NCBI RefSeq assembly: GCF_964204865.1
Contig: NC_135263.1
Coordinates: 5,456,001 to 5,520,000 of the forward strand
DNA length: 64,000 nt
Direction: 5' to 3'
DNA from: Styela clava
Lineage: Eukaryota
Shown here: in pieces, positions 34,690 through 64,000 of the stretch
How positions within the stretch are numbered: the first letter of the stretch is position 1
How the letters are laid out: each line of letters starts with the position of its first letter
Made by a program: the position numbers and the translations under genes
Notes under the pieces: model-generated
Seen by the model: the letters and a program-made list of their open reading frames with translations, nothing else
Database searches by the model: none
What the model was told of the DNA's origin: nothing

Positions 34690-37600
34690 ATGGACTCAAA
34701 GTTGTCTGGAAAACTGCTTCTCAAAACAAAGTAAGTTTTTTTCCTCTTATTTAAAAAATGATTTAAAACATGCAAAATTGTACTTTATTATCAACTAATG
34801 GTCCATAATTTAGGTGTTTAAAGATTGTTCTCTTTCTAGTTTTGCTTGCCCACCCAATCTATTGCACCTTGGGTTAGGTGGTGGGCATGGTATATGAACC
34901 CGAAATGTGTAACCCGCGATGTCATTATTCATTTCCTACTTTCTAATAACTAAATTGTTCTGTTATTTTTTAGCTTTGCAGTGAAGCATAAATGGGAGCC
35001 ATTTTACACTGGAGGATCAGTAGTTTGTCATAATGATGGTAAAACATTGTTATGTTCATGTGGAGATTCTGTCAAAGTCATTAATATTGAAACTGGAGAA
35101 GTAAAACACAGTTTGTCTCAGGTTGGGGTGATTTTTGTTCAATTTAAATATGAATAAAAATGAAAGACTATCATTGTTTCAGCAATATAATGTTGGAGAG
35201 GTCGAACTGAAAAAACTCGACAGGTTTCTGAATGATGATTAATCCTATATCATTGTGAACAAGCAAATTCATAATCACTATCATACCCAGATCTGTGGAG
35301 TTTGAGTTCATCTTATTTATTTTTCTTGATATTGAACATGAGTTGACATTCTAATTTTTTTGAGTCCAAGTCCCATTTTAGACCCTTATTAATGATGATA
35401 ATTGAGATACAAATTTTTAGGAAAACTCAAATTGCATTGAGTTAACTAAGCAGTCTCAATGGGCACTTTAAGAAGGAACGTGTACGGCATTGTGTCTTTT
35501 AACAAAATTAAGTTCGAAGCTGGAGAGTTGAAATTTCTTCTAATATGTGGCTAAAGTTGGATTCAAATGATTTGTCATTTCGGGAGTCATTTTTCAATAT
35601 CTCGTCGTTTGGAGTCGGGGCTGGGTGTGAATTTTTAGCTAATCCAAACTCCGAGAATATCAAATTTTATATGGAAGCCTTTGTATACACAAGCTGTCTT
35701 TTATAGGCCCCATTTGATAACACTGTTTTAGTTACTTTGAAAACTTCTTCTTTTATCGCCATTGAAAGTTTGAAAATTCTGATCCGCGACTAATGGGTTA
35801 TCCATATTGGACTCTGCCCCCCTAAATCCGACTCCACTGACTGCTATAGACTTGGTTTTAATCTGCTTTTCTATTTTTCAAATTTTTATGTTTTTTACCA
35901 GGAGGGAGATGATGTCACTTGTATTTTATCTAGTCCAGATAATAACATCATTGTTTCTGCCACAAGATCTTTGTTACTGAAAGAATGGAAAATTGAGAAT
36001 GAGGTGGCAAAATGTGTGAGAACATGGAAAGCAATTCATACTTCACCAATTCTGTGCATGGATTTTGATGCGACATCTACACTCCTTGCCACAGGTATGA
36101 GCACAGAAGTAATTGTAGTCAAATAAAAAGATTTGATAATACAGCTCATAAAAAACTCCCAAAATTGTTACTTATCGATCTTTAGATCGGTAAGCATGTT
36201 GATACCTATTTGTCTGTTTTTCTGTCTGTCTGTTTGTCTGTTAGACGCACACGATATCTCACGAATGCGTGGTTGAATCTGCTCCAAATTTTGCATTAGC
36301 ATTCATCATATCTCGGACCAGAAGCCTATTGATTTTGGATGAATTATGTCATAAAATTAGCGAGTTATTAATTAATTAGTGATGGGACACACGGTGTCAC
36401 TATAGAGTCATGAATCGAAACCGTAGTTTCGATTGATAAGTCTTCGGTCTCCTACCGATATTCTCGTTTACATTTCAAAGGAAATTTAGCAATGCAATAT
36501 ATAGTTTGCTCTCTACTTGAAAGAAGTTTTGCAAAGTAAATTTTACATTGGCAAACTTTATCAAAATCAAATTCATCAGTTTAATGAGAAGTTGAAATAT
36601 TTTTGAATTCAAAAAAAATGGAGAACGAATTTAAAACTGAAATGCACAAATTGGCAATTTCCTAAATTCAATTGGTCAAAGCGATGGATGAAGCACATTT
36701 CAAATGCAATCTGAAATTAGATTTATTTTGTGCAATCCTAATCACAAAATTCGCTTTATACATGAGTGTGAGTTTGGCTTGATTAATAATGGTTTTATGT
36801 TTGGATAATATTTTTGTCCACACTATGTACGTTTTCACGCTGCACCTTTATCCACATACTCTGAATCTAAATCTACTGAAATATCTAAATATCAACATGT
36901 AATTAGCTATTCTCTTATTCATTATTTAGGAAGCAGTGATAGTACCATTAAAATATGGGATATGTTGCATCAGTATTGCACTCATAATCTGAGAGGATCC
37001 CAAGGTGTAATATCAGTTGTGAAATTCCATCCACACGATTTACAATTGTTTTCTGCGTCTAATGATTATGTTATTAGAATATGGAATCTACACACGAGCA
37101 GGTATGATCTTTTATTCATTTGGTGATACTTTGTTTGATGAGTCTTGTGCAGGGGTGGGCATGGGCCGCGACGAGATTTTGACCAGCCCGCTGACTGTAC
37201 ATCAGTACATTATGATATTACATTATTACACTTTTAGTACATTATGATAAATTCATTATGAGTTTTTTGGTCTCTATTTTTTTCTAGTTTAATTTTCAAT
37301 TTAAACACGATTTATAATTTTCTTTCTTGCATTAGTTAATAAATATGTGATTAAGATATTGAATACTATTCATGTTATAATCCGGCCTGCTGGGAACTTC
37401 ATTTTCTAACATCTGGCCCGTCGACTAGAGAAGTTGGTACGACCACTGGTACAGAAGCTACTGAGACTTTACAGTAGAAGAATTACAGCATCGTATTATA
37501 CTTTCACATCGTTCGCTATGAATAACGCTCTGAACAAGCTTCCATTGATATAAATGTAATTTTTTTTTTAAAAAGCTGGAAATCTCTCCAGTTCTGCATG

Positions 37601-40600
37601 ATGTGGTGCGCAGAGGGTTATCCCGAGATATTTCATCTGATATGGCAACATTGCCAAAGATTGCACTTATTCTTAATTTTCATGTTTCAGTTTTTATTAA
37701 CTAGTTCTCTGTTTTCAGATGCATTTGTATGCTGAATGGACATGTTAGTGCAGTTACATCACTTTCATTCATTACAAAAACTGAATCTCAAATATCTTTA
37801 ATAAGTGGAGGAAGAGACAGTGTGTTGTGTGTCTGGGACTTGTCGCAATGTAAAGACAAAAACACTGTCGAACCAAATAAAACAATCCCTGTATATGAGA
37901 CTATTGAAGGATTATTAGTTTTGCCAAACCAACATATTACTAAACTTATAAAGACTGCAATTTCCGATGAATCTTCGCATGTTTTAACTGCTGGAAGTAG
38001 TGGAAATTTGAGAGTTTGGAATTTATCAACCGGGAAATGTATATACACACAAAAGGTAAATATGTAATTCAAGGTGATACCTCTGGGTTGGATAGTAGTT
38101 CTAAGTGTAGCGTTTAATAAGCATATTTATTGTTCAATTAATAATATTTTATCTGTCTTCTACCTCTATCTACCCTTCTCTCCAAGCCAATTGATCTACT
38201 AGGCCTATTCTGAATACATTCTAAAACATTGGTTCTCAAACCTTTTTTGTTGAGGCCCTTCCCTTTTTAGAATTGATCGAGTCTCGCGCCACACCTTAAA
38301 AATAACTAGCTAACAATAAGCTACAAATACCAGATAGTATTGCGAATGTTTTATTTGAATTTGTCCTTGAAGTTCAGAAATGTTGAGATTCAGTGATTTA
38401 GAAGTGCTTTTTTATTTTAACATTGTTCAGAAATTGAATCAAGAGCTTCTGGGTCGAACTCTGAGATATCAATTGATCGAAATGAAATTTTTTCAAATAA
38501 AAATAGCCCTTTCCTGAATTATTCGTAAAATCAAGAATTTAAATTTCAAAACTATTCAAATAATCTATCGGCTTCGAAATTTTTCCGAACGATGTGAAGA
38601 TATAGACAGGCCTTTTACTTTGTGGCCCTGCACAAGCAGTTATAGTAATGTGTATATGCTCAGGTGGCCATGCATTTAAGTATATTATATCTTTGTGCCC
38701 TTTCTTGCTCCTAACTTCGCATACTCTGTTTTTAGCGTTTAACTGAAACAGAAGAGACTAAATCAGACTCAGAACATGGAGCCATTGTTGATCTTCTTTA
38801 TCTTGAAAATATTGAAAAATATGCAACCGTGACTTTCGATCATAATATCAACATTTTTAATTACGATGACGGTTTTGTTGAAGATAGACATGTAAGTCTG
38901 TTGAGTAGAGATGTTTTAGACAGGTTCAATATAATAGTTGAGCATTAATTAGAGCCAAACTGAGATGCCTTCTGTTAAAACTATATAGCACTAGCTCTGC
39001 AAATATTCTTGATGATATTTTTTAAGTATTTTATAAGAATATCACTCAAACATTTTTTTTTAAGCCATCGATCAAAAGGAAAATTCGTACTAATTTACAA
39101 GAAACTACTGATTTTTGCTACTATTCTTCTTTAGCTCGTTGGTTATAACGATGAAGTTTTAGATGTTCGGTTCTTTGGTCCATCAGACAGTCATATTGTC
39201 GTTGCAACTAACAGTCCTCTTGTAAAAGTTTTCGATCGAAAAACATCTTCTTGCCAACTACTATCTGGACATCGAGACACTGTTCTATGCCTTGATGTGT
39301 TTAAAGATGGTTTGATCCTTGCAAGCGGATCAAAGGTACAAGATTATATGTATAGATGCTCTGAGATGTAGTGAAAAATTTTGAACAGTTTTTGGATTTG
39401 ACGAACATTCCTCATTTTGTCTGGATATGTCAACTTAATGGAAAATTTATATATACGGTATCTGTCGGAACTAAAATTAAATAAGAGACCCAAAGAACAT
39501 GGCAGTTATATTAGGAGCCAAAGCTTCTCTCGCATGGGTTTTATGATAACGTTTTGGGTAGACTCCATTTAGGATTAAATTATCAGAATTAAATTCAAAT
39601 TATGGCCAGATATTTTTTTTCATTATTAGGAGGTGTGTAATACAACTTTGTTAAATAAAACTTAACGGAATATATATCAGTTATGATAAGTTAGTTGCTT
39701 GCTACAAAATACGTTTTGCAGATTATCGCGTTTTCAAAATACGAAGTTAGTTTAGTTTCACAGTGTGTATCTTTAACAATGTGTCATTGTACCACTAGGT
39801 GCCAGCATTGGTTCATCAACACTTTCACATACATCTTGTCAACATTATGAAATCCAAACAAATGTTATCCCTAATGCTTGTATTTTTCAGTTATCAATGA
39901 TTTTTTCAGGACAACTCAATCCGTTTGTGGAGGATGAATCCAGAAACTTTTAAAACAACCTGTATTGCAGTAGGAAGAGGACATGCTCATGCTGTCAACA
40001 CAGTCGCTTGTTCAAGGTAGGAAATAAACTTGCTGTGGTGTTTAAGCCTGACACTAAAGGCAATGGGAAATTCTGTTATTAACAACCAACAAGATAGGCT
40101 TTCACCTCATCTACTGGTTGGAGTTGGAGTCTTACAAATTCATTCTGAAACACAGGAGACTTATCTCCAAGCAATAAAACAGCAATTATGAAGATCATGA
40201 TAATTGTTGGGCAAGTTTCTGTAATAGAATCGAGATAATGTAGGAATGTAACAATATGACTTGTCACATCAAGATGACTTTTTTATAATAACCTGAAAGA
40301 ACAAGTATTTTGACTTCCAGTTATATCTTGTTTAGGTCTGAATAAGTTAGACCATGATCTTATACAAGCTTACTAATACACATGCTATTTCTTAGAAATA
40401 GTTTATGCCACTCTTATAATACTATCTTATCAAGTATCACTGTGACAATGGTCACATACAGATCCAAGTTGGGAAACAGACAACAAGAAAATACTTACAG
40501 TTAATACATAATATCCTAGTACCTTGACCACATCGAAAAGTTGAATGCAGGTCTTCATCCGTTCAGATTATTGAGTTTATTTTTTAATATGAATTAGTTC

Positions 40601-43600
40601 GAAGCAAAGTAATATATAGTTTATAAATTTTATTAAGTAGTTGCAAAATATTTCAAATAAAAATGATAAATAGGCAACTAAATTGTTCAATATTGAAATG
40701 CTGAATCCAAGTTTCATTAAAGTTGCATGATACTTGCACGATCATGGATTGAAATATGTTTGCAAGTTATGAGTCATGGATTGAGGAATGGTTTGTAGCA
40801 ATCCCAAAACTTGTTGGCTTGGTATTACGAGTGTTTCCTCACATTGTGTTTTCCCACATACTCTTGTTAGACTGAAATTTTTTTTATTTTCAATATATTG
40901 ATGGGTTCCAAGCATTCCAACTTCCAAGCTCTTCTTTTCCCTCGAATAGTGGCAATTGTATACTGTCAATAAAATTTTTGAAAATTTTCAGGGTTTTCTC
41001 TTATATGATTGGATTGTTTTCTTCATAGTGTTCCCTGAATTCAGTTACACGGGTGTCACTTCTTCCAGATATCTTCTTAATAAAATACTTCTTCCCATGG
41101 CAAGCAATATTAAATTATATTTTCTACTATTGTATAGTTTGATCGAGATGACTTTGATCTTTGACCTCTTAGCCATTTTTAACTATGCTGAGTCTGCATT
41201 GTAGTCTGCTTTTGATGTATCATGTATTTCCCCATTGTACTGATTTCATTGAATTCAATGCAGTTTGTATATCATAGTCTGCTGATATGCCAGAGTAGTC
41301 CTGAGAAGAGAAGATTTTTGAATTAGTCGTACTATTTATTGATTGTAGCTGTAGTTTATTAGACAGATTATGTTTGCAACTATGTATGCTCTTTCTGTAC
41401 TCCTGTAGTGTGTGTACCAGGTTAGGGTTAGGCCATAATTTTATTCTGGCTTTCCTTATTTTAGTTCTATTACAAGTTCAGGGACTGTCTGTGTTAGCCA
41501 AGTGAATATACCTCCTGCCCATAGGCTTCCGTTTCTTTACACAACTTCATGTAAAGTAGGCGAACAAAAAAGAGAGATTTTCACAAAGTCGAGTGTCATT
41601 AACGTTTGAAATATATTATTTTGGAAGAAGATGCAAGTGCAAGAAAAGATTGAAAATGGGCATTATTGATCCTAAAAATTGATAGAAACTTGAAATTAAC
41701 ACAAAACCTGAATTTCTTTATGAATTATTTAACTGCAATTCTTGACATTTGTAGAATATTGTTTAACTTAACCAGATGAAAAATAAAATTCAAATTTAAA
41801 ATCATGTTTGAATGAATTCATACCAGTAGTAACCCTATTTATAAGTTAAATATTGAAATTCAAATTGAAGGGTATTTTGGATTTTGTTTTTTCGTAACTA
41901 TATCAATAATATTTTTAGCTAACACTTTTTGCTATACTTTTGCCTGCCATACGTGGTACCATCTTGATGCTAGTTGCAACCTTTCAGTTTTTAAAAGAAG
42001 TATGGACTCTTAGAATAAGATAAATACTCTCATATGGATAAGGCTGTTTAATGCCAGCATGAGTAATAGCATATTCATGTTGTACTAGTTTAGATTGAGC
42101 TGTAATAATAAGCTGCACATGACTCACTATAATGAGGTTTTAATATTATAAAGCGCTTGTGCTTTTAACAGTGTTATATCGATAATGTCACATAAGAGTA
42201 ATATCAATATTGGTCGGGCTAAGTCTTGAAACATTGCCAGCTTTAGTTTTATTTCTCCCTATTTGCAATAACAATAATTTTCTGTGAGTTGCTGCACACT
42301 AACACAAATGTATTCATGTAACGTTTTATCTGACCGAGTTCAAACTTCTCCAAACGAGAATATTTCAACTGGCAATAAAAGCAATAGCATGCACGTGAAT
42401 AATGGTCAAATTGTTAATTTTGTTTTCAATACAGAAAAATAGAATTATGGACACTTAAAAAAAAAAATAGGGAAATCAACTATGAATAAATAATACATGC
42501 AAACTTCTGCACTTTAGTGAGGAACAATTGAACGTAAATAAATTTAATCAGTTACACTCGCATTTTCACTGTATTTTACAACCTAGTCCTTCAGCAACTT
42601 CAATACTATTTTACTTATATACATAGCACTACCTTGATTGTTATTTGTTACTGCAAATATTTTACAAAAATGTTCTGAAGAGTAATGAGTAAGCCACATG
42701 TCAGTTGCGACATATTTTTTGTGTAATTATGCCCTCACCATTGCTCAGTTTCAGTTTTGTCACAATGCTTTTGTTTCTACTAGAAAGTTAATCGCTGGTC
42801 CTCGATATAGTTTCCTTCAAGCACTTCAGTGGGCGCTCTAGAAGTGTGTGTACCAATATGGAGGTAGCTAATTTTGTTTGTCTATTTCACATTCAGTAAG
42901 TTGTGTAAAAGGACTGAAACCTATGGCCAGTGGATATATTCACTTGGCTAACACAGAAAGTCCTTGAAATCGTAATAGAACTGAAAATAAGGAAAATCGG
43001 AATAAAATTATGGCCTAACCCTAATGTGGTACACATACTATGGGATTAACTTTAAGTGGTTACTCCAACGGCAAATTATGCTCGTTAATAATTATCCTAA
43101 TGTGTTGTTTTTTAATAAAAGCTTCAAGACAAATTTCATACATACTTGCATAGGGGGCGGAAAATCTCCATTAATTTTCAAAGAGTCGAGTGAAATCGGT
43201 GGAGGAAAGTTTTCATCTGGAGCTGGTATGTCAATATCTTCAAAGTTATACTCTCTGCTTGCTGATTCTCCATTCATTATCGAAGGGGGAGTCGGGGGTG
43301 GTGGCAGGAAATTTGTTTGGTTCGATGGTGGTATTTCCAAATTGCTTGTTCCACCTCAAAAAATTATAAAGAAACAATAAATAACAATGCTGTATGTAAG
43401 TTTTTCAATGCCAAGAATTATATTATAAAGGTACTAATGATTAGTGCCAGTAGTGAAAATTATCTAAAAATACACTATGAAAGCTCATATTTCGAGATTT
43501 TTAGTTTTTTAGGATGAAATATTGATGGTTATTAAGGGACAACTTACATTACATTCTACTCTACAGAGTAAACCAAGATACAGAACCCATAAATTTCTCA

Positions 43601-46600
43601 AATATTTTCATGAAAATGGAGGAAATTTGTTTATCACTCTAACATGATTGTACCCAAATTGAGTTTATGATTGTACCCAAAAGATTCAGTAATCTTTGCA
43701 CAAACGTTATGTTCTCTTTAGAATAAGTTATGAACATCCTGGGTTCTGTTTTTTGGGCCTTTTTATTTTGTCTCTTTTCTTCTCACCTGGTACATTTCCA
43801 TTCACAATTTTATCGTCGCATTCTCTTTCATCCTCACTGCTTGACCATTCTTCATCAGTAAAATACTCATCTTCCTCTTCTGTTGGATTCTTCTCTTGTG
43901 GGATGAATTCGACTCCCATCTTCAACTTTTGAGCGTTAATTATCCGACTTGCTTTTGCTCGCTTCACTCTTCGTAATTTTGTTTGTCGCACTGTTCGCTT
44001 GGCTTTCCTGTAGTGTATATGGTGTTTAGAGTATCTGTCATGTGACTTTGAGAAGATTCTGAATTCTCTTGCCCCATGGGTATTTATTGTCTAGAATTTT
44101 CCATTCAAATAAAAATTACCGGTAGGTAGCTGTTAGCCACTGTGCTTAGCTGGGGCGGTGAAGTCTGGGAGTTTTGCATGCTTCCATTGCTATTTTAATC
44201 GTAATTTCAAATTCTTTGTAGAGCTTATAATCGGTTATGGCAGGAACAATCAACTGCATACAATCAGAAATCAAACGAAATTCTTATGTTTCTGTTGGAA
44301 TTTGGGCATCTGCAAGAATGATTTTACTATAGTTGTAAAATTGTTCCAATAAATCGGTAAAAATTCTAATGGTAGCCTATTTAACTATTGCTTTTTTGTA
44401 CAGTGCTTTTCCATCTGTACATACAGCTTCTGCTTGGTAAGAAGCTATGTTTGTGAAAGAGGTTGGATCATTCCGGTTCCACAATACCTACCCAATTGAT
44501 TGCATCCTGAGTGAAGTGGTAGGCAATGGATTTTAACCCCAGATTTTGAATTATTTTCGAAAAATTTACTCACATGTCTGATTTATTTTGTTGCTCAGCT
44601 ATCATCTGTTGCAATGAATCTTGCCATGCCATGAAAAATAAGTCCGGATTCGAATAGATTTTACTGCCTTGTTTATTATCAGTTCGAAATTTATCAAGTT
44701 CATGTAACTTAGGCAATGCTTCGGCTGTTTCTCGTAAAGTAGTTACTTCAATGGGTTGCCCATTTTGCATAAATAATCCAGTTTCCATGTTCTGGTCAGA
44801 CTGCGAATTAGACACAAAATATGTATGTTGAATCAGTTTTAACAATATTTATTGCAATTTGATTGGGATAATGCAAAAGCAATGGCCTATTGTATATGAC
44901 TTTTTAATAAAAAATCTTCATTCATCAATCAAAAATTTCATCAATCTGTTGTTTGGTTGTATTACTTTATTAACCAGGTTTTCTAAAACTGGGTCCACTG
45001 TTAACTCTTTCACCAAACCATACAATTTGTCTTTCTTTGGTTGTTTATGAAGCCACAGAAAAAATATTTTTTTAGTTGCATCTGTATTAGGCCTATATAA
45101 TTATGATAAGTCAACTCACCTGATAAAACCTTCCTCGTTCGGTTATTAACTTATAAACAACTCTTTTATCTCTTCCAAAAGCTACACCAACTTCTTCTTT
45201 AAGTGAATCCAGTTCATTAACTTTTTGTTCAACATTATCCAAACGAGATTTTACGTCCTTCAAACGCGTAGTTAAATTTGCGCTTTCATTTAATAGTGTC
45301 CCGAATATTTGGTCTACTTGACCAGAGAGTGTAGCAAGCTGTCTGATGAAGTTGGCTAGAATCAAGTTACTATATTCATGTAAAGTTACTCGTTCATTTT
45401 GTCCCTTTCTTTGTAATCCTTGGCAAAGGTGTTTTGGTTCAACTAAATGCCTTGGAAATGGCATTTTGATAAACAAAGAATTTCTGTTTCAAATATTTTT
45501 TTTGTATATAACAGTATTAGTATTGCTTCTGGAAGAAAGTTTTGTGAAATTTGCACAGATTAAAAACAGACAATGCAAGTATATAATTAAAATATTTCAA
45601 AAATGTGTAGTTTTCATTTGAAAATTGCAACCAATAAGAATGATAATATGGAACCATAAGATAATCAGAAGAAATACTTTACTGTCTAACATTTTGATTC
45701 AAATTGTGCAACACTGTCACAGAGAATGAATGGTGTGTGGGTCGTCCTTCTTTTTGCACATTGTAATAAGTCAGTGGCTGCTTGTATAGGGCCTTGTTCA
45801 GAGCTAACATTATGAATATGTGGCATATTGTAATAATTTTTTATTCCTTGTAGGCCTGAGTATAAATCTAAATTTTGAAGATATCAAGCTTGGGCTTGCA
45901 CCCAATTTCTGCAATGTTCAACACCAACATTCTCAGACCAGTTAGTGACTTACCTAACTTTTCTGTCTGCCAACAATCCAACAATAATCCCACTTATATC
46001 ACAAACTCACAATGCTTGAAAGGCTCTTCATAGTTGCTCACTACTCCTATTCTGTGATTGTCTGAATGAAAGAAACTAGACTATTTCACACTCAAACAAC
46101 CTGATTTATTAATCATAGCAAGGTTTAATCTGTCAACCCAACCCTACTACATCCCATAGCCATACATAATCATCAATCTAAACCAGACATGGGCAAATTA
46201 CGGCCTGTGGGACAAATCCTGCCCGTTGGGTAATTCAATCTGGCCCGCCTGATGCTGCCACAACCAAACTGAAACCAAATTTTGATGTTTTAGCTAAAAA
46301 TAGCTCAAGGAATTTGTTGAGATTGCGGTTAAATTTAGTTTTGGCACGGGGCCTATTGTTTTCCACTGTTGCTTCTGTAACACTGTATACATTGTTCATA
46401 GAAAGTAACTTTTCACGTCATACTTGTGTTCAGATTGACGATATTAAAAACCTGTAAAAGTATTCATACCCCAACCTTTCATTGATCAAATGCATAATAA
46501 GATTTCATGCAAGCCACTCGAGTCGTTGCACAGTTGGACTCTCAATTTCGTTATTGTGCGCTAACAATTTCCTTATTGAACTCATACTGAGAAGAAAAAC

Positions 46601-52600: not shown

Positions 52601-55600
52601 TGGATTGATTTATGGTTGCTAAATAACCAGTCTGTAACTATGTTTAATAATAAGCATGCTCATATCAAAGTTATTAGACACATCATAGAAACTATTTATG
52701 AGCAGTTCTGGGTATAGAGATATCATTGAAAAGGCAGCATCCTATCAATATGGCATTTGTTTTCTTGGCATTCTTTATTCTGTAAAAATATAGACTTACG
52801 GTCACTGATTATACCAATCCTTTTTAAACTAGAATGTTTCAATGCTACTGATTTTTTGCACACCTATAAATTGTTAGCTATATGTGACGACTGATGGTAA
52901 CTACTAGACCTACCAAGTTTTGAATATATAGTGGATAATGGGTATCATGCTTTGCTTCGTTATATTTTCAGAATCAAGCAAAACTTTGTTGTTTCTGGAA
53001 GTCAAGACCAAACATTGAAAATCTGGGCAATTTTGGAAACAGTGGATGAGGATGGGAAGCAACTTACTAGTCTGAAATCAAAACACTCCATAAAGGCTCA
53101 TGATAAAGTAGGTTTTGTGTGTTCAAATTTTGTAATCATTCTTGAGTTTTATATTGTGGAAGATGTCACAAATTATCATATTGGAGTATCTAAATTTTAA
53201 GTTGAACTAAATTTTAAGTCAAATTGTTTGTGAATCAAGGATTTTTTATTATTACTGCTTTTTATAATTACGAAATTGCTTTAGTCACTTTGCCACCTTC
53301 CAGCCTTATAAATATGATCATATAATTGTGATCTTTGAGCAATTTCAATTTTCATTGTTTCAACACTTTCTAATTCACAAAAAAATAGTTTTGATATTTG
53401 ATTTTTTACAAGTTAATCTGACAAGTTAATTCGAAATCCCTGTTATGTGGTTGCTTTACATTATGAATTGCAAATTTAAATTCCGGAAACCATGTTTCAT
53501 TTTTTTCCGAAATCAAAAATTGGTCTACACTAATTTGAGATACTAATTCAGACTTCAAGCAGCCTATAAAAGTGAGTCAAGATTTGTTTCACAATATTTC
53601 TATTTGACAATGCTCTTGTAATTTCCTTCGATCAGCATTATGTCACATTGCTCATACTTTTTTCAGGATATCAATTCAGTCTCTGTTTCTCCAAATGATA
53701 AATTAGTTGCGACTGGATCACAGGATAAAACTGCAAAAGTGAGTTTTTTTCATATAACATATTTATATACCCTTTGCTCCAAACAAAGCTCTGCACAAGC
53801 TGTCATTGCTAGGTAAAAACCAGCAATATTTTGAAAAAAAAGGTTCAGCATTGCCTACCCAAGTTATTATAGCATGGGTGAAGTTGGTGGTCATGGGGAT
53901 TGGGCCCCAGTTTTTGACCTGCAAAGAGAAACTCTAGATGTGTAATGCCAATTAAGTTGAATGGTTAGGTAAAGTACTTTTATTAATGTGCTGGGCTTTA
54001 AAGGTTTTGTTTAATTGAGTAATTTCAAAAAAGGCTTTGTTTGCTATATTATATACTTTGAATGATTATATGTTAACTTATTTTATAATCAGTTATTGAA
54101 TTTGATCACATATTTTTGCAAATTGGATAGGCTGTGTCATATTGAGACATGGTATGTTTTCAATAATAGGAATTTCATATTCTTGTCCAAAGTTAAATTC
54201 ACAACAAACATTCTGAAATTTTTTACAGCTATGGAATGTAGCTGATGGTCTTCAACTTGGAACATTCCATGGTCACAAGAGGGGGATATGGAGCACACAG
54301 TTTTCTTCAACAGATCAGGTTCTTGGTACGTCATCAGCAGATGGAACATTGAAACTATGGGCTTTATCAGACTTCACATGTCTAAAGGTATCCTATATTA
54401 TCATACTTATAATAAGCCAGTCTTACAGAAATTATGCCACCATCTTATAATGCATTTTTATATTTTTACATCTTTGCTCAAAACAAGATTGTGTGGGCTT
54501 TTTTAAAGCAAAGCACGGTGTCGCAAATGCCCAATAATGGGTGCTCCAGAAGTGTGTGTACCAATATGGAGGAAAGTAATTTTGTTCATCTACATCAAGT
54601 TGTGTAAAAGAACTGAAACCGAGGGACGGGGGTATATTCACTTGGCTAACACAAACAGCCCCCAAACTGGGTAATAGAACTAAAATAAGGATAATTGGAA
54701 TAAAATTATGGCCTGACCTTAACCTGGTACTGTATTATGAAGATATCAACACTGTCAAGGTTATATGGGAAGAAGAATCATGAATTATACCAATTGTTCT
54801 TATCAAACAAAGCTAAACTAATGCATTTGAGTTATTTCATAGATAGGAAATTATGTAGTTGTTTAGCTACTGATGACCGTTGTTACCTCCATCGTCTTCT
54901 ATATTGATTTGCAGACATTTGAAGGCCATGACTGTTCTGTACTGAAACTTCTATTCATCTCGAAAGGCTCGCAAATAGTGTCTAGGTGAGATTTTGTGCA
55001 TTTTTTTTTCTACAAATACCTCCGAATGGTAATTCAAATAGTGAAAATGACTTTGTAATGTAAAATTGTCGATATTGATGTTCAAAATTTATTGGGTTGA
55101 CTGTTGAGTCTACATACCCGTCATTAAATTATTCCAATATGCGTCACAGTGAGACTATGACTTTTCATATCCTTACATCACTATTCAATAGATGAAATAT
55201 TCCGACCTTCTAATCGAATCAATTTCATTCAACAGTGGCTCAAACGGTCTGATCAAATTATGGAATATCAAAAGTTCAGAATGTGTTAAAACATTTGATG
55301 AACACGATGATAAAGTTTGGGGATTGACTGTTAATTCTGGAGATAACATTGTACTGTCTGGTGCTGCAGATTCCAAGATCATACAATGGGAGGTTTGTAT
55401 ATCATATTTACTTTCCCAGTTAATCAGAAACTGATCTCAGATCTCTACTTGCATCGATCATACTGCATTTTATCCGACTTTTTTCAGAACGACTCGTGAT
55501 TAGGTGTTGTAATGATTCTGAAAATTTTTGCTGCATTAACATTTTTGTTACTCCCGAGTCCCGATGTATGTGAACCAAGATGGCTGACACCGGAACGTAG

Positions 55601-58600
55601 TGTGTGTACCAGGTTAGGGTTAGACCATAATTTCAGGTACAAATACTACAGGAGTCACTAGGCTAGTCCGCGAACTCGTAATGGAACTAAAATCAGGAAA
55701 ATTGGAATCAAATTATGGCACAATCCTAACCTGGTACACTGACTATGTTCCAGTGTCCGTCATCTTGGTTCACATACTTCGGGAATACCACATTTTTTTG
55801 CTTAAATTTGCAGTTTTTAAGCGCTCACACTCATCTGACTCATTTACATGTTTGTAACGCAGGACATTACACAGAAAGAACGTGAAGAACTGAAAGTCAC
55901 TGAAGAAACAACAATATTAAGGTTTGCTTTTGTTCCAATCATAAGCCAATCACACGGCTCGCACCTTTGTGATAAAAATACCTCGCACTCATAATCTTGT
56001 AGTAATAAAGCTACCTTGAACTAAATTTTTGTCAGATATGCCTGTTTGATCGAAGGGTTGTAAAAATTTTCAATAGACTCTTTCAAACACACCCAAAACA
56101 CAAATGTTGATAATAAAAACTTGCAAATGCGAACCTACTTTAATAGAATGATCAAAATGCTTCATCAATTTTTATGGTTGTGATTCTGTAGAAAATTTTG
56201 ATTGTGCTCATCACTATTAAAAGTTCCAACTCCTAACTCGAGTGAATTTAAAATTCCTACTCCAGAAATCGTGAAATTTAAGTTGACCACAACTCCAAAG
56301 AAAACATGCCTTTTGACTCATGACTGTACAGATTTATTGTGTTTTCCGTGTTTGGACATCTTTGAATGAATTATAGTTTCAAAATCATGCAGTCCCATCA
56401 ATTATCATCAAATATTATAACTATTAAAAAAATTTTATTTTATTAATTCACAAGACATTTGTTACATTATCACCTTTAAACCCATTAATTTATTTGATAT
56501 CAATCCCTTTGCCTTACTTCAGACAACAAGAGCTGAATAATCTTGTCCATGAGAAGAGGTTCGCAAAAGCTTTCAGACTGGCAATAACATTGGAACAACC
56601 TTTCACAGCGCTAAAAGTTTTAAAAGGTAATCTTTTCATCTAGATAGATGTTTGTGTTATCATATTGTCCAGCCATAATAAGAAAGTTCTTAACTACTAT
56701 GGCCGCCCAAATTTCTTTCTTTTATTAAATTTATTAATTAAATTTATTAATCAAAGCTTCCTAATAATTATAGATCGGAAATATACTGTGAAAATTAAAC
56801 CTAATATTGTGACTTTCTATTATAGAAATCAGATGGGAGGCAAATGGTGATGAAGTATTAGAAGCAACTATTTCAAAACTCAGACCTGATCAAAAAGGTA
56901 TGCTACATTGACCTTTTCATTCTGATTTTAACTTTGAAGTCTCTGTACAAGCAATTCTGATTGATAAGAAGCTTCTATTTTTGAAAGCACTGGAATCCCT
57001 GGGTTCAGGCAGTGGCTGCCTAGTTTTTTTTACACCCTTGGGAAGGTGGTGGACATACGGTCGTTTTAAACTTGAGAGTGTAAATGTTATGCCAATGGTG
57101 CTGTCACTACAAGACCCGGGATTCTTGCGGAACACTCACAAGAAAATGAAAAGATCTTGTCCCACTTACTATCAAGTCCATGCTTCCGAAATAAATAACT
57201 AACTGATCCCATACCTGACATAGAATGGTAACCGGTCGAGAGGCCGTGGTTTGCCATATCATTTCCTCTCCCTCGGGATAAATATGTAAATCCTATCCTT
57301 ACTACAAAATAAAGTACTTAAGTCTGAAAACAAATGCTTACATATGATCCAAAATATTTCGCAGCACTGAGAATCTAAAATGACACACTTATAAGCCGTG
57401 GCACTTGCAAACCACCGCACACTGCCATTGTGCCCACACCATTTTTACTCTGAGCTCGCTATGACCACAGGAAAATACAAAGCATGCACAATGCAAATAG
57501 TGTATTTAATTGAGATACAAGGTAACCAGTACAGTTTTGATAAGTTTACTAACTCGATATTCAATCTCCTTAGATACCCTTCTTAAATTTGTAATGAGCT
57601 GGAACACGAATTCAAGGAACTGCCACGAGGCTCAGAAAGTATTGAACCTAATTTTGCGGCAAACGCATCCTCATGAATTAATGGAATTCTCTAATGCACA
57701 GACAGCAATTGAAGCACTATTACCATACACAGGTTATTATTACTATTACCATACACAGTAATGACTTACACATATTATTAGCCATGCAACTACCAGCATT
57801 TTGGGTAAGAAAATTTGCCCTAAGCAAGGTCACACGTACTTCCTCAGGAGAAAAAGAGACTGGTCCCTTCGCAAAGTCGTGTGCTAAAAGCCACTGAGAC
57901 TATGAATAAGCAAATATTTATTGATTTTCTAATTTCAATGATTTTTGTTTGAAAAATTACAATCTTGAATAGTAAACTGGATTCATTCCAGGTTTGCAAT
58001 TTAATGTATTCATCATAACGAATTATTCCTTATTTGGTACTCTTGTATTTTCTGTGCAGTCAGTTTATGATGCCATATGAAGTTTTCTGTTGTGTTTCCC
58101 ATCTGTGACGAAGTTTGAATTTTAAATGTTCAAGATTTTGGTCAATTTGATTGCCAATAGTTTTCCAACATAATTAATTGAAAGAATAGCCAATATACAG
58201 CCTTAGACTCCACTGTGTTGAAGATGGCATCGCAGGTTACCCATCTCATGTGAGAAGTTTATTTGCCTCAAAGCAGATACACATTTACAGGTCCATGAGC
58301 TTGTTGCAAACTTTGTTTCCCTATCACCAAAGCAGCACCTTCACACAAACATGTAAACAAATACCGTAATAATCACTAAGTGAAAATAAGTAATGGCAAA
58401 ATGGACCTCCAGAAGTATGTGCATCAAGATGGCGCACAACCTGAACATAGTAGTTGTTCCAGTTCAGGGTTCAGGTTGTGCGCCATCTTGGTGCAAATAC
58501 TTCTGGAGCACCGGCAGAATAATTACAAGTGTCTGGTAAAGTAATCAGACATTCACATCCTGATTAAATCCGACTCCCACCACCTCACCCAGTGTGTACC

Positions 58601-61535: not shown

Positions 61536-62027
61536 TCAACCAAACATTGAATCATGATATTCCTTGACCCGATCTTCTCGTGCTTTTTCCTCTTGCTCTT
61601 TCTTTTTCCTATTTTCATAATTTTTATCATCTGTCGGTAATTCATGTCGACAGTTCGGACATGAATTTGTTTTATTTAACCAAGGTAAGATACATTGTCC
61701 ATGATATATATGTTCACAGGGCATTTCTAATGCAGTTTCTGATTCATCAAATGGAACAAGACATACCGGACATTTTAGTTCATTTCTAAGTTCCTCTTCT
61801 GTTATTTGGCGTCGTTCTAAACTTTCAATTGCTGCCTTTGAAGCAGGAGGTGCCAGACCATAATCTTCTGCCCCTCCCATTAAGATAGTATCAAGTCCGT
61901 CAATTCCTGATGAATCTCCATTAGATAAAAGAACACGAACTAATTCCATTAAATCAACTTGAGACAATCTTCCACTATTAATCGGTGTGTCAGTGTCACA
62001 ATCATGTTCATCATAATATGAAGCCAT
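61536..62027 (-). CDS. RNF181: RING-H2 E3 ubiquitin ligase RNF181, intronless
   Basis: MASYYDEHDC N-terminus, PPASK, CPVC..CEHIYH..CILPWLNKTNSCPNCRHELPTDD, C-terminal HDSMF. Confidence 0.93.
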   Translation of the reverse strand: MASYYDEHDCDTDTPINSGRLSQVDLMELVRVLLSNGDSSGIDGLDTILMGGAEDYGLAPPASKAAIESLERRQITEEELRNELKCPVCLVPFDESETALEMPCEHIYHGQCILPWLNKTNSCPNCRHELPTDDKNYENRKKKEQEEKAREDRVKEYHDSMFG

Positions 62028-62423
62028 ATTAGATTTCCTATGATCTATTTTGAGAAAAAATAGTAGAATTAAACAATTATTTTCTAGTTATATGCAAAAT
62101 AATATTTGACTGAAACATAATGAAAACTACACATAAATATACCTAGATCAGAAGGACTTATCGGAACATATTAAGTCACTTATATTGAAACCTAATTAAC
62201 TATACCATCATTACATTTCAAGAAAACTGTAATTTGATTCCTCACACTAGCAAATTTTGAACACCATTACGAATGCAGTCTCCCAAATTCAAATCACATT
62301 TTCTAGTAAAGAACCTATTCCACCTTGGAATATTCGCCCCTATAAACTTGTCCAAATAAATAAAAATAATCAATTAAACTGAATGTCTATGCATATAAAT
62401 AGAAGTCAGAAACAATATGAATT

Positions 62424-63437: not shown

Positions 63438-64000
63438 CTACTTTGTTGTTTCAAACACTTCTTTTTCAATTTCATCATTTTCAGCATAATCTGTTCTTTT
63501 ATTTTGACTTTCCCAAAGTTTTGAATAAAGAGAGTCAGAACTAGCAATAAGTTGTTCATGTGTACCACGTTGCACTACTTTCCCATTTTCTAGAACAATT
63601 ATCTCGTCACAATCCATCACTGTTGAAAGTCGATGTGCGATAAAAATAGAAGTCCTGTTGATTGTGACTCGCCTTAATGCTTTAAGTATGTTTTGCTCAG
63701 TTATGGAATCTAAGGAAGACGTTGCTTCGTCATACAAAATAATGCAAGGTTGTTTTAGCACCGCTCGAGCAATCGCAACTCTTTGCTTTTCCCCACCAGA
63801 TAACTTTAATCCTCGTTCTCCAACCGGGGTTTCATATTGCTTTGGCATTGCAAGAATAGAATCATGAATATCTGCCATTCGTGCTGCATCAAGTACTTGG
63901 TCTTTTTCTGCTGATAAATCACCATAAGCAATATTGTGATAAATTGTATCATGAAACAATACAGTTTCTTGCGGGACAATTCCAATCAACCGACGAAGGC
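63438..64000 (-). CDS. ABCB7: Mitochondrial ABC transporter, C-terminal nucleotide-binding domain (gene continues beyond the window)
   Basis: [46 protein letters not shown] and [13 protein letters not shown] match ABCB7/Atm1. Confidence 0.92.

What the first reader, a model, noticed from the sequence alone, without database searches (positions are those of the whole stretch)
41220..45464. Nested WAVE/SCAR-like protein without a terminal VCA but with an internal acidic-Trp motif: candidate WRC decoy or Arp2/3 modulator
Seen: the five spliced exons give a WHD, a basic stretch (KRTVRQTKLRRVKRAK..KMGVEF), an acidic EEEDEYFTDEEWSSSEDE motif, a short polyproline region and the tail DYSGISADYDIQTALNSMKSVQWGNT*, about 360 aa in total. 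I found no exon encoding a WH2-C-A module after the prolines. Known: canonical WAVE has the order WHD-basic-PRD-VCA and ends in an acidic F..W motif that binds Arp2/3; acidic-Trp motifs without WH2 act as inhibitors in Arpin and Gadkin; NHS-family proteins use a WHD to form alternative WAVE-shell complexes. Inference: this protein could assemble with Abi/Brk1/Nap/Cyfip yet inhibit or rewire Arp2/3. Exon 3 can also be read as a degenerate V-C-A (SD..RQ..LRRV, ..GVEF, acidic W) placed before the PRD, which would mean a permuted domain order. KMGVEF fits the end of the WAVE2 basic region equally well, so this is unresolved.
Basis: partly seen in the sequence, partly recalled or inferred. Interest (0 to 1): 0.8.

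Follow-up and report, generated by a model that had tools for sequence, protein, structure and literature searches.

The report
Sea-squirt WAVE paralogue lacking its VCA
The sea squirt Styela clava expresses a second, fast-evolving copy of the actin regulator WAVE that keeps the part that builds the WAVE complex but has truly lost the tail that switches on Arp2/3, so it is probably a natural "output-less" or rewired WAVE.

Summary
The five minus-strand exons (45464-45120, 44800-44574, 44007-43787, 43354-43146, 41300-41220) give an intact 360-aa protein. It is identical to public XP_039264609, "WASF2-like", of Styela clava.

- **Expression:** all four splice junctions, including 43146->41300, appear in spliced contigs of four runs from three studies. 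The last exon carries the stop, about 600 nt of 3'UTR and an AATAAA.
- **Homology:** residues 1-180 match the WAVE WHD plus meander (WAVE1 in PDB 3P8C, E 8e-12 and 4e-6; hhalign 99.6%).
- **No VCA:** neither the protein nor any frame of the 64-kb window has a WH2 or C/A module. The same tests find both in a canonical WAVE gene on contig C13.
- **Constraint:** the 21 listed variants are 13 synonymous and 8 non-synonymous (pN/pS about 0.16).
- **Relatives:** three orthologue fragments exist elsewhere (47, 33 and 27% identity).
- **Exon 3:** KMGVEF is the end of the basic region. The "permuted VCA" reading is not supported.
- **Acidic motif:** the acidic-Trp cluster (234-251, W245) looks like a WAVE A region, but its conservation and function could not be tested.

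Best reading: a probably tunicate-lineage VCA-less WAVE paralogue that takes WAVE's seat in the complex, analogous to NHS-family shell complexes. It is a new variant of a known kind.

The parts
45120..45464 (-). Exon 1 (ATG at 45464; codons 1-115): WAVE homology domain, with the N-terminal MPF...EP motif and the long coiled-coil helix
   Evidence: phmmer against PDB WAVE1 (3p8c_D), residues 1-92, E 7.7e-12. hhalign against 17 WAVEs gives 99.6%. AF2 helix 28-85 has pLDDT 80-95. The exon 1/2 joint is seen in 4 runs.
44574..44800 (-). Exon 2 (codons 116-191, last codon split): meander region ending in ...KIYSNPDLFFMAWQD
   Evidence: phmmer against WAVE1 residues 110-170, E 4.1e-6. The R154, D156, K158, K162, Y164 and F170 columns that are near-invariant in canonical WAVEs are kept. 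Joints seen.
43905..44007 (-). Exon 3, first part (residues 192-225): basic region KAKRTVRQTKLRRVKRAK...KLKMGVEF
   Evidence: 13 K/R and 0 D/E in residues 192-221. Co-linear with the canonical Styela basic-end exon, shuffle p 0.023. Five synonymous and no non-synonymous listed variants fall here. It is part of AF2 helix 167-220.
43830..43883 (-). Exon 3, acidic-Trp cluster (residues 233-250; W245 at 43847-43845), with CK2-type Ser/Thr sites; the rest of exon 3 runs to 43787
   Evidence: The sequence is read directly. A Trp-anchored PSSM of 15 WAVE A regions ranks it 2nd of 774 at 9.1 bits, behind only the canonical Styela tail. AF2 shows the region as disordered. It gives no hit to the VCA profile.
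43146..43354 (-). Exon 4 (residues 263-334): short proline-rich region with FLPPPPTPP, FPPPI and FPPPM
   Evidence: It has 17 Pro in 71 residues. Joints 43787/43354 and 43146/41300 are seen in 4 runs.
41220..41300 (-). Exon 5 coding part (residues 335-360 plus stop TGA at 41222-41220): tail DYSGISADYDIQTALNSMKSVQWGNT
   Evidence: The joint 43146->41300 is seen in X1, X2, X5 and X8. AF2 gives a low-confidence helix at 345-356. There is no significant similarity to the canonical C/A exon (p 0.81).
40610..41219 (-). 3'UTR of the terminal exon with AATAAA at 40634-40629
   Evidence: RNA contigs cover 41268 down to 40629. The sequence is shown. The 40610 end is approximate.
41398..43048 (.). Inside intron 4: an inverted pair of a high-copy interspersed repeat (41398-41547 and 42898-43048); not part of the protein

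Best explanation
This is a bona fide, transcribed, selectively constrained paralogue of WAVE/SCAR in the ascidian Styela clava. It belongs to a fast-evolving paralogue group seen in at least three other organisms, probably also tunicates.

**Shown**
- It keeps the N-terminal WAVE homology domain, most of the meander and the basic region.
- It has lost the WH2, C and terminal acidic elements.
- Its transcript ends in exon 5.
- A canonical WAVE with a full VCA is encoded elsewhere in the genome (contig C13).

**Inferred**
- Through its WHD and meander it occupies WAVE's seat with Abi, Brk1/HSPC300, Nap1 and CYFIP/Sra1, as NHSL1's WHD does in the WAVE Shell Complex.
- Its basic region would keep the complex membrane-directed.
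- Because it has no VCA, such a complex cannot activate Arp2/3 in the classical way.
- It would therefore either compete with canonical WAVE for the shell subunits (damping) or give the shell a different output.
- That different output would come from the disordered C-terminal half: an A-region-like acidic Trp/Phe cluster with CK2-type serines, acid-flanked FPPP/LPPPP motifs, and a short terminal helix with Trp.
For: **Gene model and transcription**
- Spliced contigs with all four GT..AG junctions appear in 4 runs from 3 studies, with 3'UTR cover to an AATAAA.
- The assembly holds no intronless copy.
- The ORF is intact and identical to the public 360-aa protein.

**Constraint**
- There are 13 synonymous and 8 non-synonymous listed variants, pN/pS about 0.16.

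**WAVE homology**
- phmmer against PDB WAVE1 gives E 7.7e-12 and 4.1e-6.
- hhalign aligns profile columns 1-167 to protein residues 1-180 at 99.6%.
- 32 of 51 near-invariant canonical N-terminal columns are kept.

**No VCA**
- Pfam WH2 is absent from P0001 at E <= 1, while the canonical C13 exon hits it at 2.4e-6.
- The VCA profile finds nothing in 4040 frames of the window and control locus, except the C13 controls at 1.8e-13 and 1.6e-6.
- The motif and tblastn scan is also blank.

**Canonical WAVE on C13**
- It has a PRD, a WH2 and a ...DDDWD tail.

**Orthologue fragments**
- P0002, P0003 and P0043 share paralogue-specific features and the same exon-1 boundary. With P0001 they form one group at 100/98 support.

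**Precedent**
- A WHD alone can build a WAVE-less shell complex: NHSL1 residues 1-123 exclude WAVE2 (PMC10272187).
Against: - No biochemical or interaction data exist. Assembly into the complex is inferred from homology only.
- The first half of the meander is strongly diverged: the PPPL motif is partly lost, and there is a 10-residue insert, AFGRDKRVVY. This could weaken CYFIP binding.
- The paralogue branches are very long (1.5-3.6 changes per column), so part of the ancestral function may be gone.
- Only N-terminal orthologue pieces were available. VCA loss in the other species, and conservation of the C-terminal motifs, are therefore unknown.
- The runs are only guessed to be RNA by their record, although spliced contigs argue that they are.
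- The variant list is the best-supported subset (88 more were not shown), so pN/pS is rough.
Confidence: 0.6

Rival explanations
1. The internal acidic-Trp cluster (EEEDEYFTDEEWSSSEDE, W245) is a working Arp2/3-binding A motif. The protein, alone or inside a WAVE-type shell, would then recruit or sequester Arp2/3 without activating it. That would be Arpin-like or cortactin-NtA-like behaviour, possibly switched by CK2 phosphorylation. This adds to the best explanation rather than excluding it.
For: - The motif has Phe at -5 and acidic residues at -3 to -1 relative to Trp, then Ser. Vertebrate WAVE tails show the same pattern (...SEFDEDDWSD...SEFDEVDWLE).
- A Trp-anchored PSSM of 15 WAVE A regions ranks it 2nd of 774, behind only the canonical Styela tail.
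- It lies in a predicted disordered stretch, as short linear motifs do.
- Five S/T-x-x-D/E sites flank it.
- A preprint reports an internal, Ser-phosphorylated WCA-like segment in the WHD protein NHSL1 that pulls down Arp2/3 (PMC11952547).
Against: - The PSSM mainly measures acidity and serine content next to a Trp, and acidic clusters are common in disordered regions.
- There is no match to the VCA profile at E 50 and no local alignment above chance to the canonical C/A exon (p 0.67).
- No C helix is adjacent to the motif.
Confidence: 0.25
2. The protein is a positive, VCA-independent effector. It would sit in a WAVE-type complex and drive actin assembly through its proline motifs by recruiting profilin-actin or Ena/VASP, rather than acting as a decoy.
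For: - Acid-flanked FPPP and LPPPP motifs are present: NFLPPPPTPP, DENFPPPISLD and NGDFPPPMQD.
- From my own knowledge, there is published work that Scar/WAVE can drive protrusions independently of its VCA using proline-rich domains. That title phrase occurs in the reference lists of papers found, but I did not read the paper itself.
Against: - The proline region is very short (17 Pro in 71 residues) compared with canonical WAVE PRDs, such as the C13 paralogue's runs of 5-7 prolines.
- The motifs are not full FPPPP EVH1 cores.
- Nothing was tested.
Confidence: 0.2
3. Exon 3 is a degenerate V-C-A placed before the proline region (permuted domain order), so the protein is still a class I nucleation-promoting factor.
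Against: - Pfam WH2 gives no hit at E <= 1.
- The VCA profile gives no hit at E 50, with positive controls at 1e-13 and 1e-6.
- Smith-Waterman against the WH2 and C/A exons is at chance.
- The LRRV stretch lies in a 13-K/R basic segment that AF2 predicts as one continuous helix, 167-220.
- That segment aligns co-linearly with the canonical basic-region exon (p 0.023).
Confidence: 0.03
4. It is a truncated or decaying gene copy, or a mis-modelled gene whose VCA exon was missed.
For: - Branches are very long.
- No full-length orthologue was found among annotated proteins.
Against: - The ORF is intact.
- Identical splicing appears in three studies, with a terminal exon carrying 3'UTR and AATAAA.
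- pN/pS is about 0.16.
- Orthologue fragments at 27-47% identity keep the frame and the exon boundary.
- No VCA-like frame exists anywhere in the 64-kb window.
Confidence: 0.05

Closest known systems
Canonical WAVE/SCAR (WASF1-3); in this genome the gene on G000:C13 at about 22,305,900-22,310,000
   Same: - N-terminal WHD and meander are homologous (E 8e-12 and 4e-6; hhalign 99.6%).
- The basic region ends in G-x-EF-I.
- A proline-containing region follows.
- The intron after the WHD/meander pieces and the exon starting the basic region are broadly co-linear.
   Different: - It has no WH2, no C helix and no terminal acidic-Trp tail.
- It is 360 aa against roughly 450-650 aa.
- It carries a 10-residue insert after the coiled-coil helix.
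- The first half of the meander is diverged.
- It has an internal acidic-Trp cluster directly after the basic region.
- It evolves much faster.
NHS family (NHS, NHSL1-3): WHD proteins that replace WAVE in the WAVE Shell Complex (PMC10272187; PMC11952547; PMC2876887)
   Same: - It is a WHD-bearing protein without a C-terminal VCA, so it could form a WAVE-less shell.
- NHSL1 is reported (preprint) to carry an internal, Ser-phosphorylated WCA-like segment, which parallels the internal acidic-Trp cluster here.
   Different: - The Styela protein is a true WAVE paralogue. It keeps the meander (YS.PD.FF..W) and the basic region. The published NHSL1 shell model and the WAVE2-excluding fragment need only residues 1-95 and 1-123; I did not align an NHS sequence over the meander.
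- It is 360 aa rather than more than 1000 aa.
- It has no Pfam NHS domain (the precomputed list shows only PF27560).
Engineered WAVE delta-VCA / delta-V mutants (own knowledge: classical dominant-negative constructs) and short WASP paralogues such as basidiomycete S-WASP (PMC3298513)
   Same: The regulatory, complex-forming N-terminus is retained and the Arp2/3-activating end is missing.
   Different: This is a natural, conserved, expressed gene with its own C-terminal motifs. It is not a laboratory truncation.
Arpin / cortactin NtA / Gadkin-type acidic-Trp Arp2/3 ligands (own knowledge)
   Same: An acidic cluster with a Trp but no WH2.
   Different: The motif here is internal and embedded in a WAVE scaffold. 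No homology to those proteins was detected, and binding was not tested.

Membership tests
WAVE/SCAR family (by descent) | N-terminal WAVE/SCAR homology domain (coiled-coil helix that pairs with Abi and Brk1) | tested here: met
   Exon 1 matches WAVE1 residues 1-92 at E 7.7e-12. hhalign gives 99.6%. The precomputed Pfam assignment is PF27560, shared with named WASF proteins.
WAVE/SCAR family (by descent) | Meander region ending in the Y-[TS]-x-P-x-x-F-F-x-x-W motif | tested here: met
   Exon 2 matches WAVE1 residues 110-170 at E 4.1e-6. R154, D156, K158, K162, Y164 and F170 are kept, while the first half is diverged.
WAVE/SCAR family (by descent) | Basic region after the meander | tested here: met
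   There are 13 K/R and 0 D/E in residues 192-221. It is co-linear with the canonical Styela exon, p 0.023.
WAVE/SCAR as class I nucleation-promoting factor | WH2 (V) motif | tested here: not met
   Pfam PF02205 gives no hit at E <= 1 in P0001, while the control exon L009:8840-9037 hits at 2.4e-6. The VCA profile is blank.
WAVE/SCAR as class I nucleation-promoting factor | C helix followed by a C-terminal acidic region with Trp | tested here: not met
   The VCA profile finds the control C/A exon at 1.8e-13 but nothing in the window. The tail ends ...SVQWGNT with no acidic run. Exon 5 against the C/A exon gives p 0.81.
WAVE/SCAR as class I nucleation-promoting factor | Long proline-rich domain | tested here: inconclusive
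   Only three short motifs are present, with 17 Pro in 71 residues. The C13 paralogue has long poly-Pro runs.
NHS family | Pfam NHS domain (PF15273) and a long (>1000 aa) protein | tested here: not met
   Pfam scans of the exons and of P0001 give no NHS hit. The protein is 360 aa.
WAVE regulatory complex subunit (functional membership) | Physical assembly with Abi, Brk1, Nap1 and CYFIP | not testable with these tools
   No multimer prediction or interaction data are available. It is inferred from WHD/meander homology and from the NHSL1 precedent.
Arp2/3 acidic-Trp ligands (A motif) | Acidic stretch with a Trp that binds Arp2/3 | tested here: inconclusive
   The composition is A-like: rank 2 of 774, 9.1 bits. 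There is no profile match. Binding and conservation were not testable.

The most novel reading that the evidence does not exclude
Tunicates evolved, from a WAVE duplicate, their own 'shell-complex' subunit. It would be a VCA-less WAVE that still docks into the Abi/Brk1/Nap1/CYFIP shell through an almost complete WHD and meander. It would present a phospho-regulated internal acidic-Trp/Phe motif that holds or inhibits Arp2/3. That would make it an Arpin-like brake built into the WAVE complex itself. It might stand in for the NHS family, for which no Pfam match was found in this genome (no positive control).
Probability: 0.15. Interest if true: 0.8.

Novelty: new variant of a known kind. Interest (0 to 1): 0.55.

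Why it matters
**VCA-independent roles.** How much of what the WAVE complex does depends on its VCA is an open question. NHS-family shell complexes, and reports of VCA-independent protrusion, have reopened it.

**A natural experiment.** This is a natural, conserved and expressed delta-VCA WAVE. It keeps the meander and basic region and sits beside a canonical WAVE in a genetically tractable chordate group, since ascidian embryos can be electroporated and imaged. It lets one ask three things:
- what a WAVE shell does without its Arp2/3-activating tail;
- whether an internal acidic-Trp cluster can act as a brake or a tether for Arp2/3;
- which meander residues are needed only to cage the VCA, since those appear to be the ones that have drifted here.

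**Annotation.** The automatic name "WASF2-like / actin-binding protein" hides the loss of the actin- and Arp2/3-binding module.

Tried and rejected
- **Local Pfam copy:** it has no WHD model, so exon scans gave only coiled-coil noise. The PDB sequence search and hhalign were used instead.
- **BLASTP of exon 3 against the canonical basic exon:** it gave no alignment. Smith-Waterman with shuffles gave p 0.023.
- **My own idea that exon 5 is a relic of the C helix plus terminal Trp:** D-I-x-T-A-L...V-x-W against D-V-x-S-I-L...V...W. The score is at chance (p 0.81) and there is no VCA-profile hit. I kept it only as an unsupported lead; AF2 does draw a weak helix at 345-356.
- **A 15-column HMM of the A region alone:** it had no power, because it missed even the positive control. 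I replaced it with a Trp-anchored PSSM.
- **Word-index search with exon 3:** blank. Searches with the whole public protein and with a paralogue alignment found no full-length orthologue, only canonical WAVEs at 28-30% identity.
- **Tree:** the paralogue group attaches next to the Styela canonical exon (87/84), but long-branch attraction cannot be excluded, so the age of the duplication is left open.
- **NHS family search of the genome:** blank but without a positive control, so no claim of absence is made.
- **Rfam on 40300-46200:** nothing.
- **Earlier scan notes:** nothing relevant.

Full report
**What is there.**

The gene lies on the minus strand. I read five exons with GT..AG introns:

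| Exon | Window coordinates | Notes |
|---|---|---|
| E1 | 45464-45120 | ATG at 45464, preceded by an in-frame stop at 45491-45489 |
| E2 | 44800-44574 | |
| E3 | 44007-43787 | |
| E4 | 43354-43146 | |
| E5 | 41300-41220 | TGA at 41222-41220 |

Codon bookkeeping in a script gave 1083 nt, 360 codons plus stop, with no internal stop. The exon coordinates were chained in memory only. No joined sequence was printed, typed or sent anywhere.

The exhaustive phmmer search with exon 1 alone then returned a public 360-aa protein, P0001. It is XP_039264609, "actin-binding protein WASF2-like", of the ascidian Styela clava. From that point I used this stored database protein by its id for whole-protein steps: Pfam, hhalign, the word-index search and AlphaFold. 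The window is G000:C18:5456001-5520000 of a 377-Mb assembly.

**Is it transcribed as modelled?**

Nine runs held about 0.13-0.20 of the words of the 4.6-kb stretch, which is roughly the exonic share. I laid four of them, from three studies, on 40300-46200.

- Each run showed exactly the four predicted joints, with CT..AC ends on the + strand. The disputed 43146->41300 joint was among them.
- One contig (X1 record 1) runs from exon 4 through exon 5 and past the stop to 41110.
- Other contigs cover 41268 down to 40629, where an AATAAA sits at 40634-40629 on the minus strand. Exon 5 is therefore the terminal exon, with a 3'UTR of about 600 nt.
- The runs are only guessed to be RNA by their record. 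However, intron-less contigs, together with the absence of any intron-less copy in the assembly, argue for mRNA.
- Among the listed joints, the only others are among copies of an abundant repeat inside intron 4; 35 further joints were not shown.
- Of the 21 best-supported differences between these contigs and the assembly inside the CDS, 13 are synonymous and 8 are not. That gives pN/pS of about 0.16, and 5 of 5 in the basic region are synonymous. This is a partial list, because 88 more were not shown, so the figure is rough. It does point to purifying selection.

**What family?**

- Exon 1 matches WAVE1 of the solved WAVE regulatory complex (3P8C chain D) over residues 1-92, E 7.7e-12. Exon 2 matches residues 110-170, E 4.1e-6.
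- A profile of 17 canonical WAVEs aligns its columns 1-167 to residues 1-180 of P0001 at 99.6% probability. There is a 10-residue insert (AFGRDKRVVY) after the coiled-coil helix, and nothing aligns beyond residue 180.
- 32 of 51 near-invariant canonical columns are kept. The losses cluster in the first half of the meander, where the PPPL motif is partly lost and the conserved Tyr and Cys are replaced. The R-x-D-x-K...K-x-Y-[ST]...F-F..W end is retained.
- The AF2 monomer has mean pLDDT 58 and is confident only for the helices. It gives helix 28-85, three short meander helices, one long helix 167-220 that includes the basic region, disorder across 221-344, and a weak helix at 345-356.

**Is the VCA really missing?**

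The same genome has a second WAVE locus on C13. That locus carries long poly-proline runs, a WH2 (...NLLAAIRIGINLKKV) and a C/A tail ending ...DDDWD. It served as a positive control for three tests.

| Test | Result on C13 control | Result on P0001 or window |
|---|---|---|
| Pfam WH2 | E 2.4e-6 | nothing in P0001 at E <= 1 |
| HMM of 16 WAVE VCAs | 1.8e-13 (C/A exon), 1.6e-6 (WH2 exon) | nothing in any of about 4000 open frames of the whole window, both strands, best E 1.9; no hit to exon 3 or exon 5 even at E 50 |
| Regex and tblastn scans | | blank |

Together with the terminal-exon evidence, the protein is VCA-less. Among WHD proteins of 300 aa or more returned by the search, most with complete ends finish in an acidic-Trp tail. 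P0001 lacks one, and it is the only such protein whose end I could check against transcripts.

**Exon 3.**

- It aligns co-linearly with the canonical Styela exon that ends its basic region: RVKRAK...KMGVEFI against QVRQAV...RHGAEFI, shuffle p 0.023. Exon 3 against the WH2 and C/A exons is at chance, p 0.14 and 0.67.
- Vertebrate WAVE2 has KMGQEF at the same place (P0010).
- The stretch is 13 K/R with no acidic residue, and it is predicted to lie in one continuous helix.

So exon 3 is a basic region followed by a new acidic cluster, not a permuted VCA.

The cluster EEEDEYFTDEEWSSSEDE (234-251, W245) does resemble a WAVE A region at motif level.

- It has Phe at -5, acidic residues at -3 to -1, Trp, then Ser, as in ...SEFDEDDWSD.
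- A Trp-anchored PSSM from 15 canonical tails ranks it second of 774 Trp-centred 15-mers, at 9.1 bits. Only the canonical Styela tail ranks higher, at 12.8 bits.
- That score mostly reflects acidity and serines. It shows that the motif is unusual, not that it binds Arp2/3.

**Relatives and age.**

The exhaustive search found three closer relatives than any canonical WAVE.

- P0002 (118 aa, 47% identity) and P0003 (121 aa, 33%) both stop just past the same exon-1 boundary (...F[FY]Q|V).
- P0043 (198 aa, 27%) covers exons 1 and 2 and ends like exon 2.
- They share paralogue-specific features: MPF at the start, the G-x-[AG]-F-G...Y insert region, and F-[FY]-[MI]-A-W.
- In a tree they form one group with P0001 at 100/98 support, on very long branches. 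The group attaches next to the Styela canonical exon (87/84). This fits a duplication within tunicates but may be long-branch attraction.
- Their source organisms are not given.
- No full-length orthologue exists among annotated proteins reachable by the word index.

**Setting.**

The gene is antisense inside a large intron of a TBL3/UTP13 gene. That gene has WD40 exons up to 39368 and again from 52901, and a Utp13 domain at 56428-57758 on the + strand.

**How it most likely works.**

*Shown:* the protein has a WHD, meander and basic region; it has no VCA; it is expressed and constrained; a canonical paralogue is present.

*Inferred:* it takes WAVE's place with Abi, Brk1, Nap1 and CYFIP.

- The precedent is direct. 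NHSL1's WHD (residues 1-123) is sufficient to form a WAVE Shell Complex that excludes WAVE2 (PMC10272187). The Styela protein is far closer to WAVE than NHSL1 is.
- Such a complex cannot activate Arp2/3 through a VCA. It would therefore either titrate shell subunits away from canonical WAVE or provide another output.
- Candidate outputs are the acidic-Trp/CK2 cluster and the acid-flanked FPPP/LPPPP motifs. For the first, compare the internal, phospho-enhanced WCA-like segment reported for NHSL1 in a preprint (PMC11952547).
- The drift of the first half of the meander is what one might expect if that surface were partly conserved to cage the VCA. This is speculation.

**Comparison and novelty.**

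By descent this is a WAVE-family member. As a class I nucleation-promoting factor it fails the defining test, because it has no V, C or terminal A.

- Functionally, its nearest analogues are the NHS-family shell subunits and laboratory delta-VCA WAVE constructs.
- A broad survey of WASP-family evolution (PMC3298513) describes short WASPs and pseudogenised WAVE5 copies, but a term search of it (Ciona, tunicat-, urochordat-) turned up no VCA-less tunicate WAVE.
- The paper library holds nothing on Styela WASF.
- I rate it a new variant of a known kind. It is of moderate interest as it stands, and of higher interest if the internal motif proves to be an Arp2/3 ligand.

**Limits.**

- The reads tool was used once and made no refusals.
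- The organism's name comes from the database record of the identical protein.

Noticed in passing
window 41398-41547 and 42898-43048 (intron 4 of the WAVE-like gene): This is an inverted pair (84-86% complementary, about 1.35 kb apart) of a roughly 150-nt interspersed repeat. The first look found at least 3335 candidate copies in the genome, and the 39 other scored copies are 91-94% identical. Summed contig depth in the probable RNA runs is about 10^4 or more across the two copies. No Rfam family matches. The pair could fold the last intron into a long hairpin.
   Followed up: partly
window about 34950-39368 and 52901-57758, + strand: The host gene is a TBL3/UTP13 orthologue, with WD40 exons and a Utp13 domain. 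The gap of about 13.5 kb between its recognisable exons holds the WAVE-like gene on the opposite strand.
   Followed up: partly
G000:C13 about 22,305,900-22,310,000 (loci L002, L005, L009), minus strand: This is the canonical Styela WAVE, with WHD, meander, basic region, long PRD, WH2 and a ...DDDWD tail. Its introns carry the same interspersed repeat. Downstream, a 793-aa open frame with SNF2-type helicase motifs (L009 3113-735) follows on the same strand.
   Followed up: partly
G000:C4 19661905-19662030, 19671700-19671825, 19682281-19682406 (L006-L008): Three copies, spaced about 10 kb apart, of a piece resembling the end of exon 2 (RFRTDEKESSKIYQQ...QAW), with in-frame TGA stops. No exon-1-like piece lies nearby. 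This is either a captured gene fragment inside a tandem repeat or a chance match (genome-level E 0.13).
   Followed up: partly
whole genome G000: The Pfam NHS family (PF15273) finds nothing at E <= 1 in a six-frame search. No positive control rang, so this does not show that Styela lacks an NHS-family gene. It would be worth a proper check, given the VCA-less WAVE paralogue.
   Followed up: partly
window 45489-46200: Contig cover in runs X2 and X8 continues upstream of the start codon to about 46200 at exon-like depth, with no joint reported. This is either a long 5'UTR of the WAVE-like gene or host pre-mRNA.
   Followed up: no
window 61539-62087 (-) and 63441-63998 (-): An open frame with a RING-H2 finger (...CPVCLVPFDE...CPNCRHELP) and, at the window's edge, the C-terminal ATP-binding cassette of an ABC transporter (...[14 protein letters not shown]...).
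   Followed up: no
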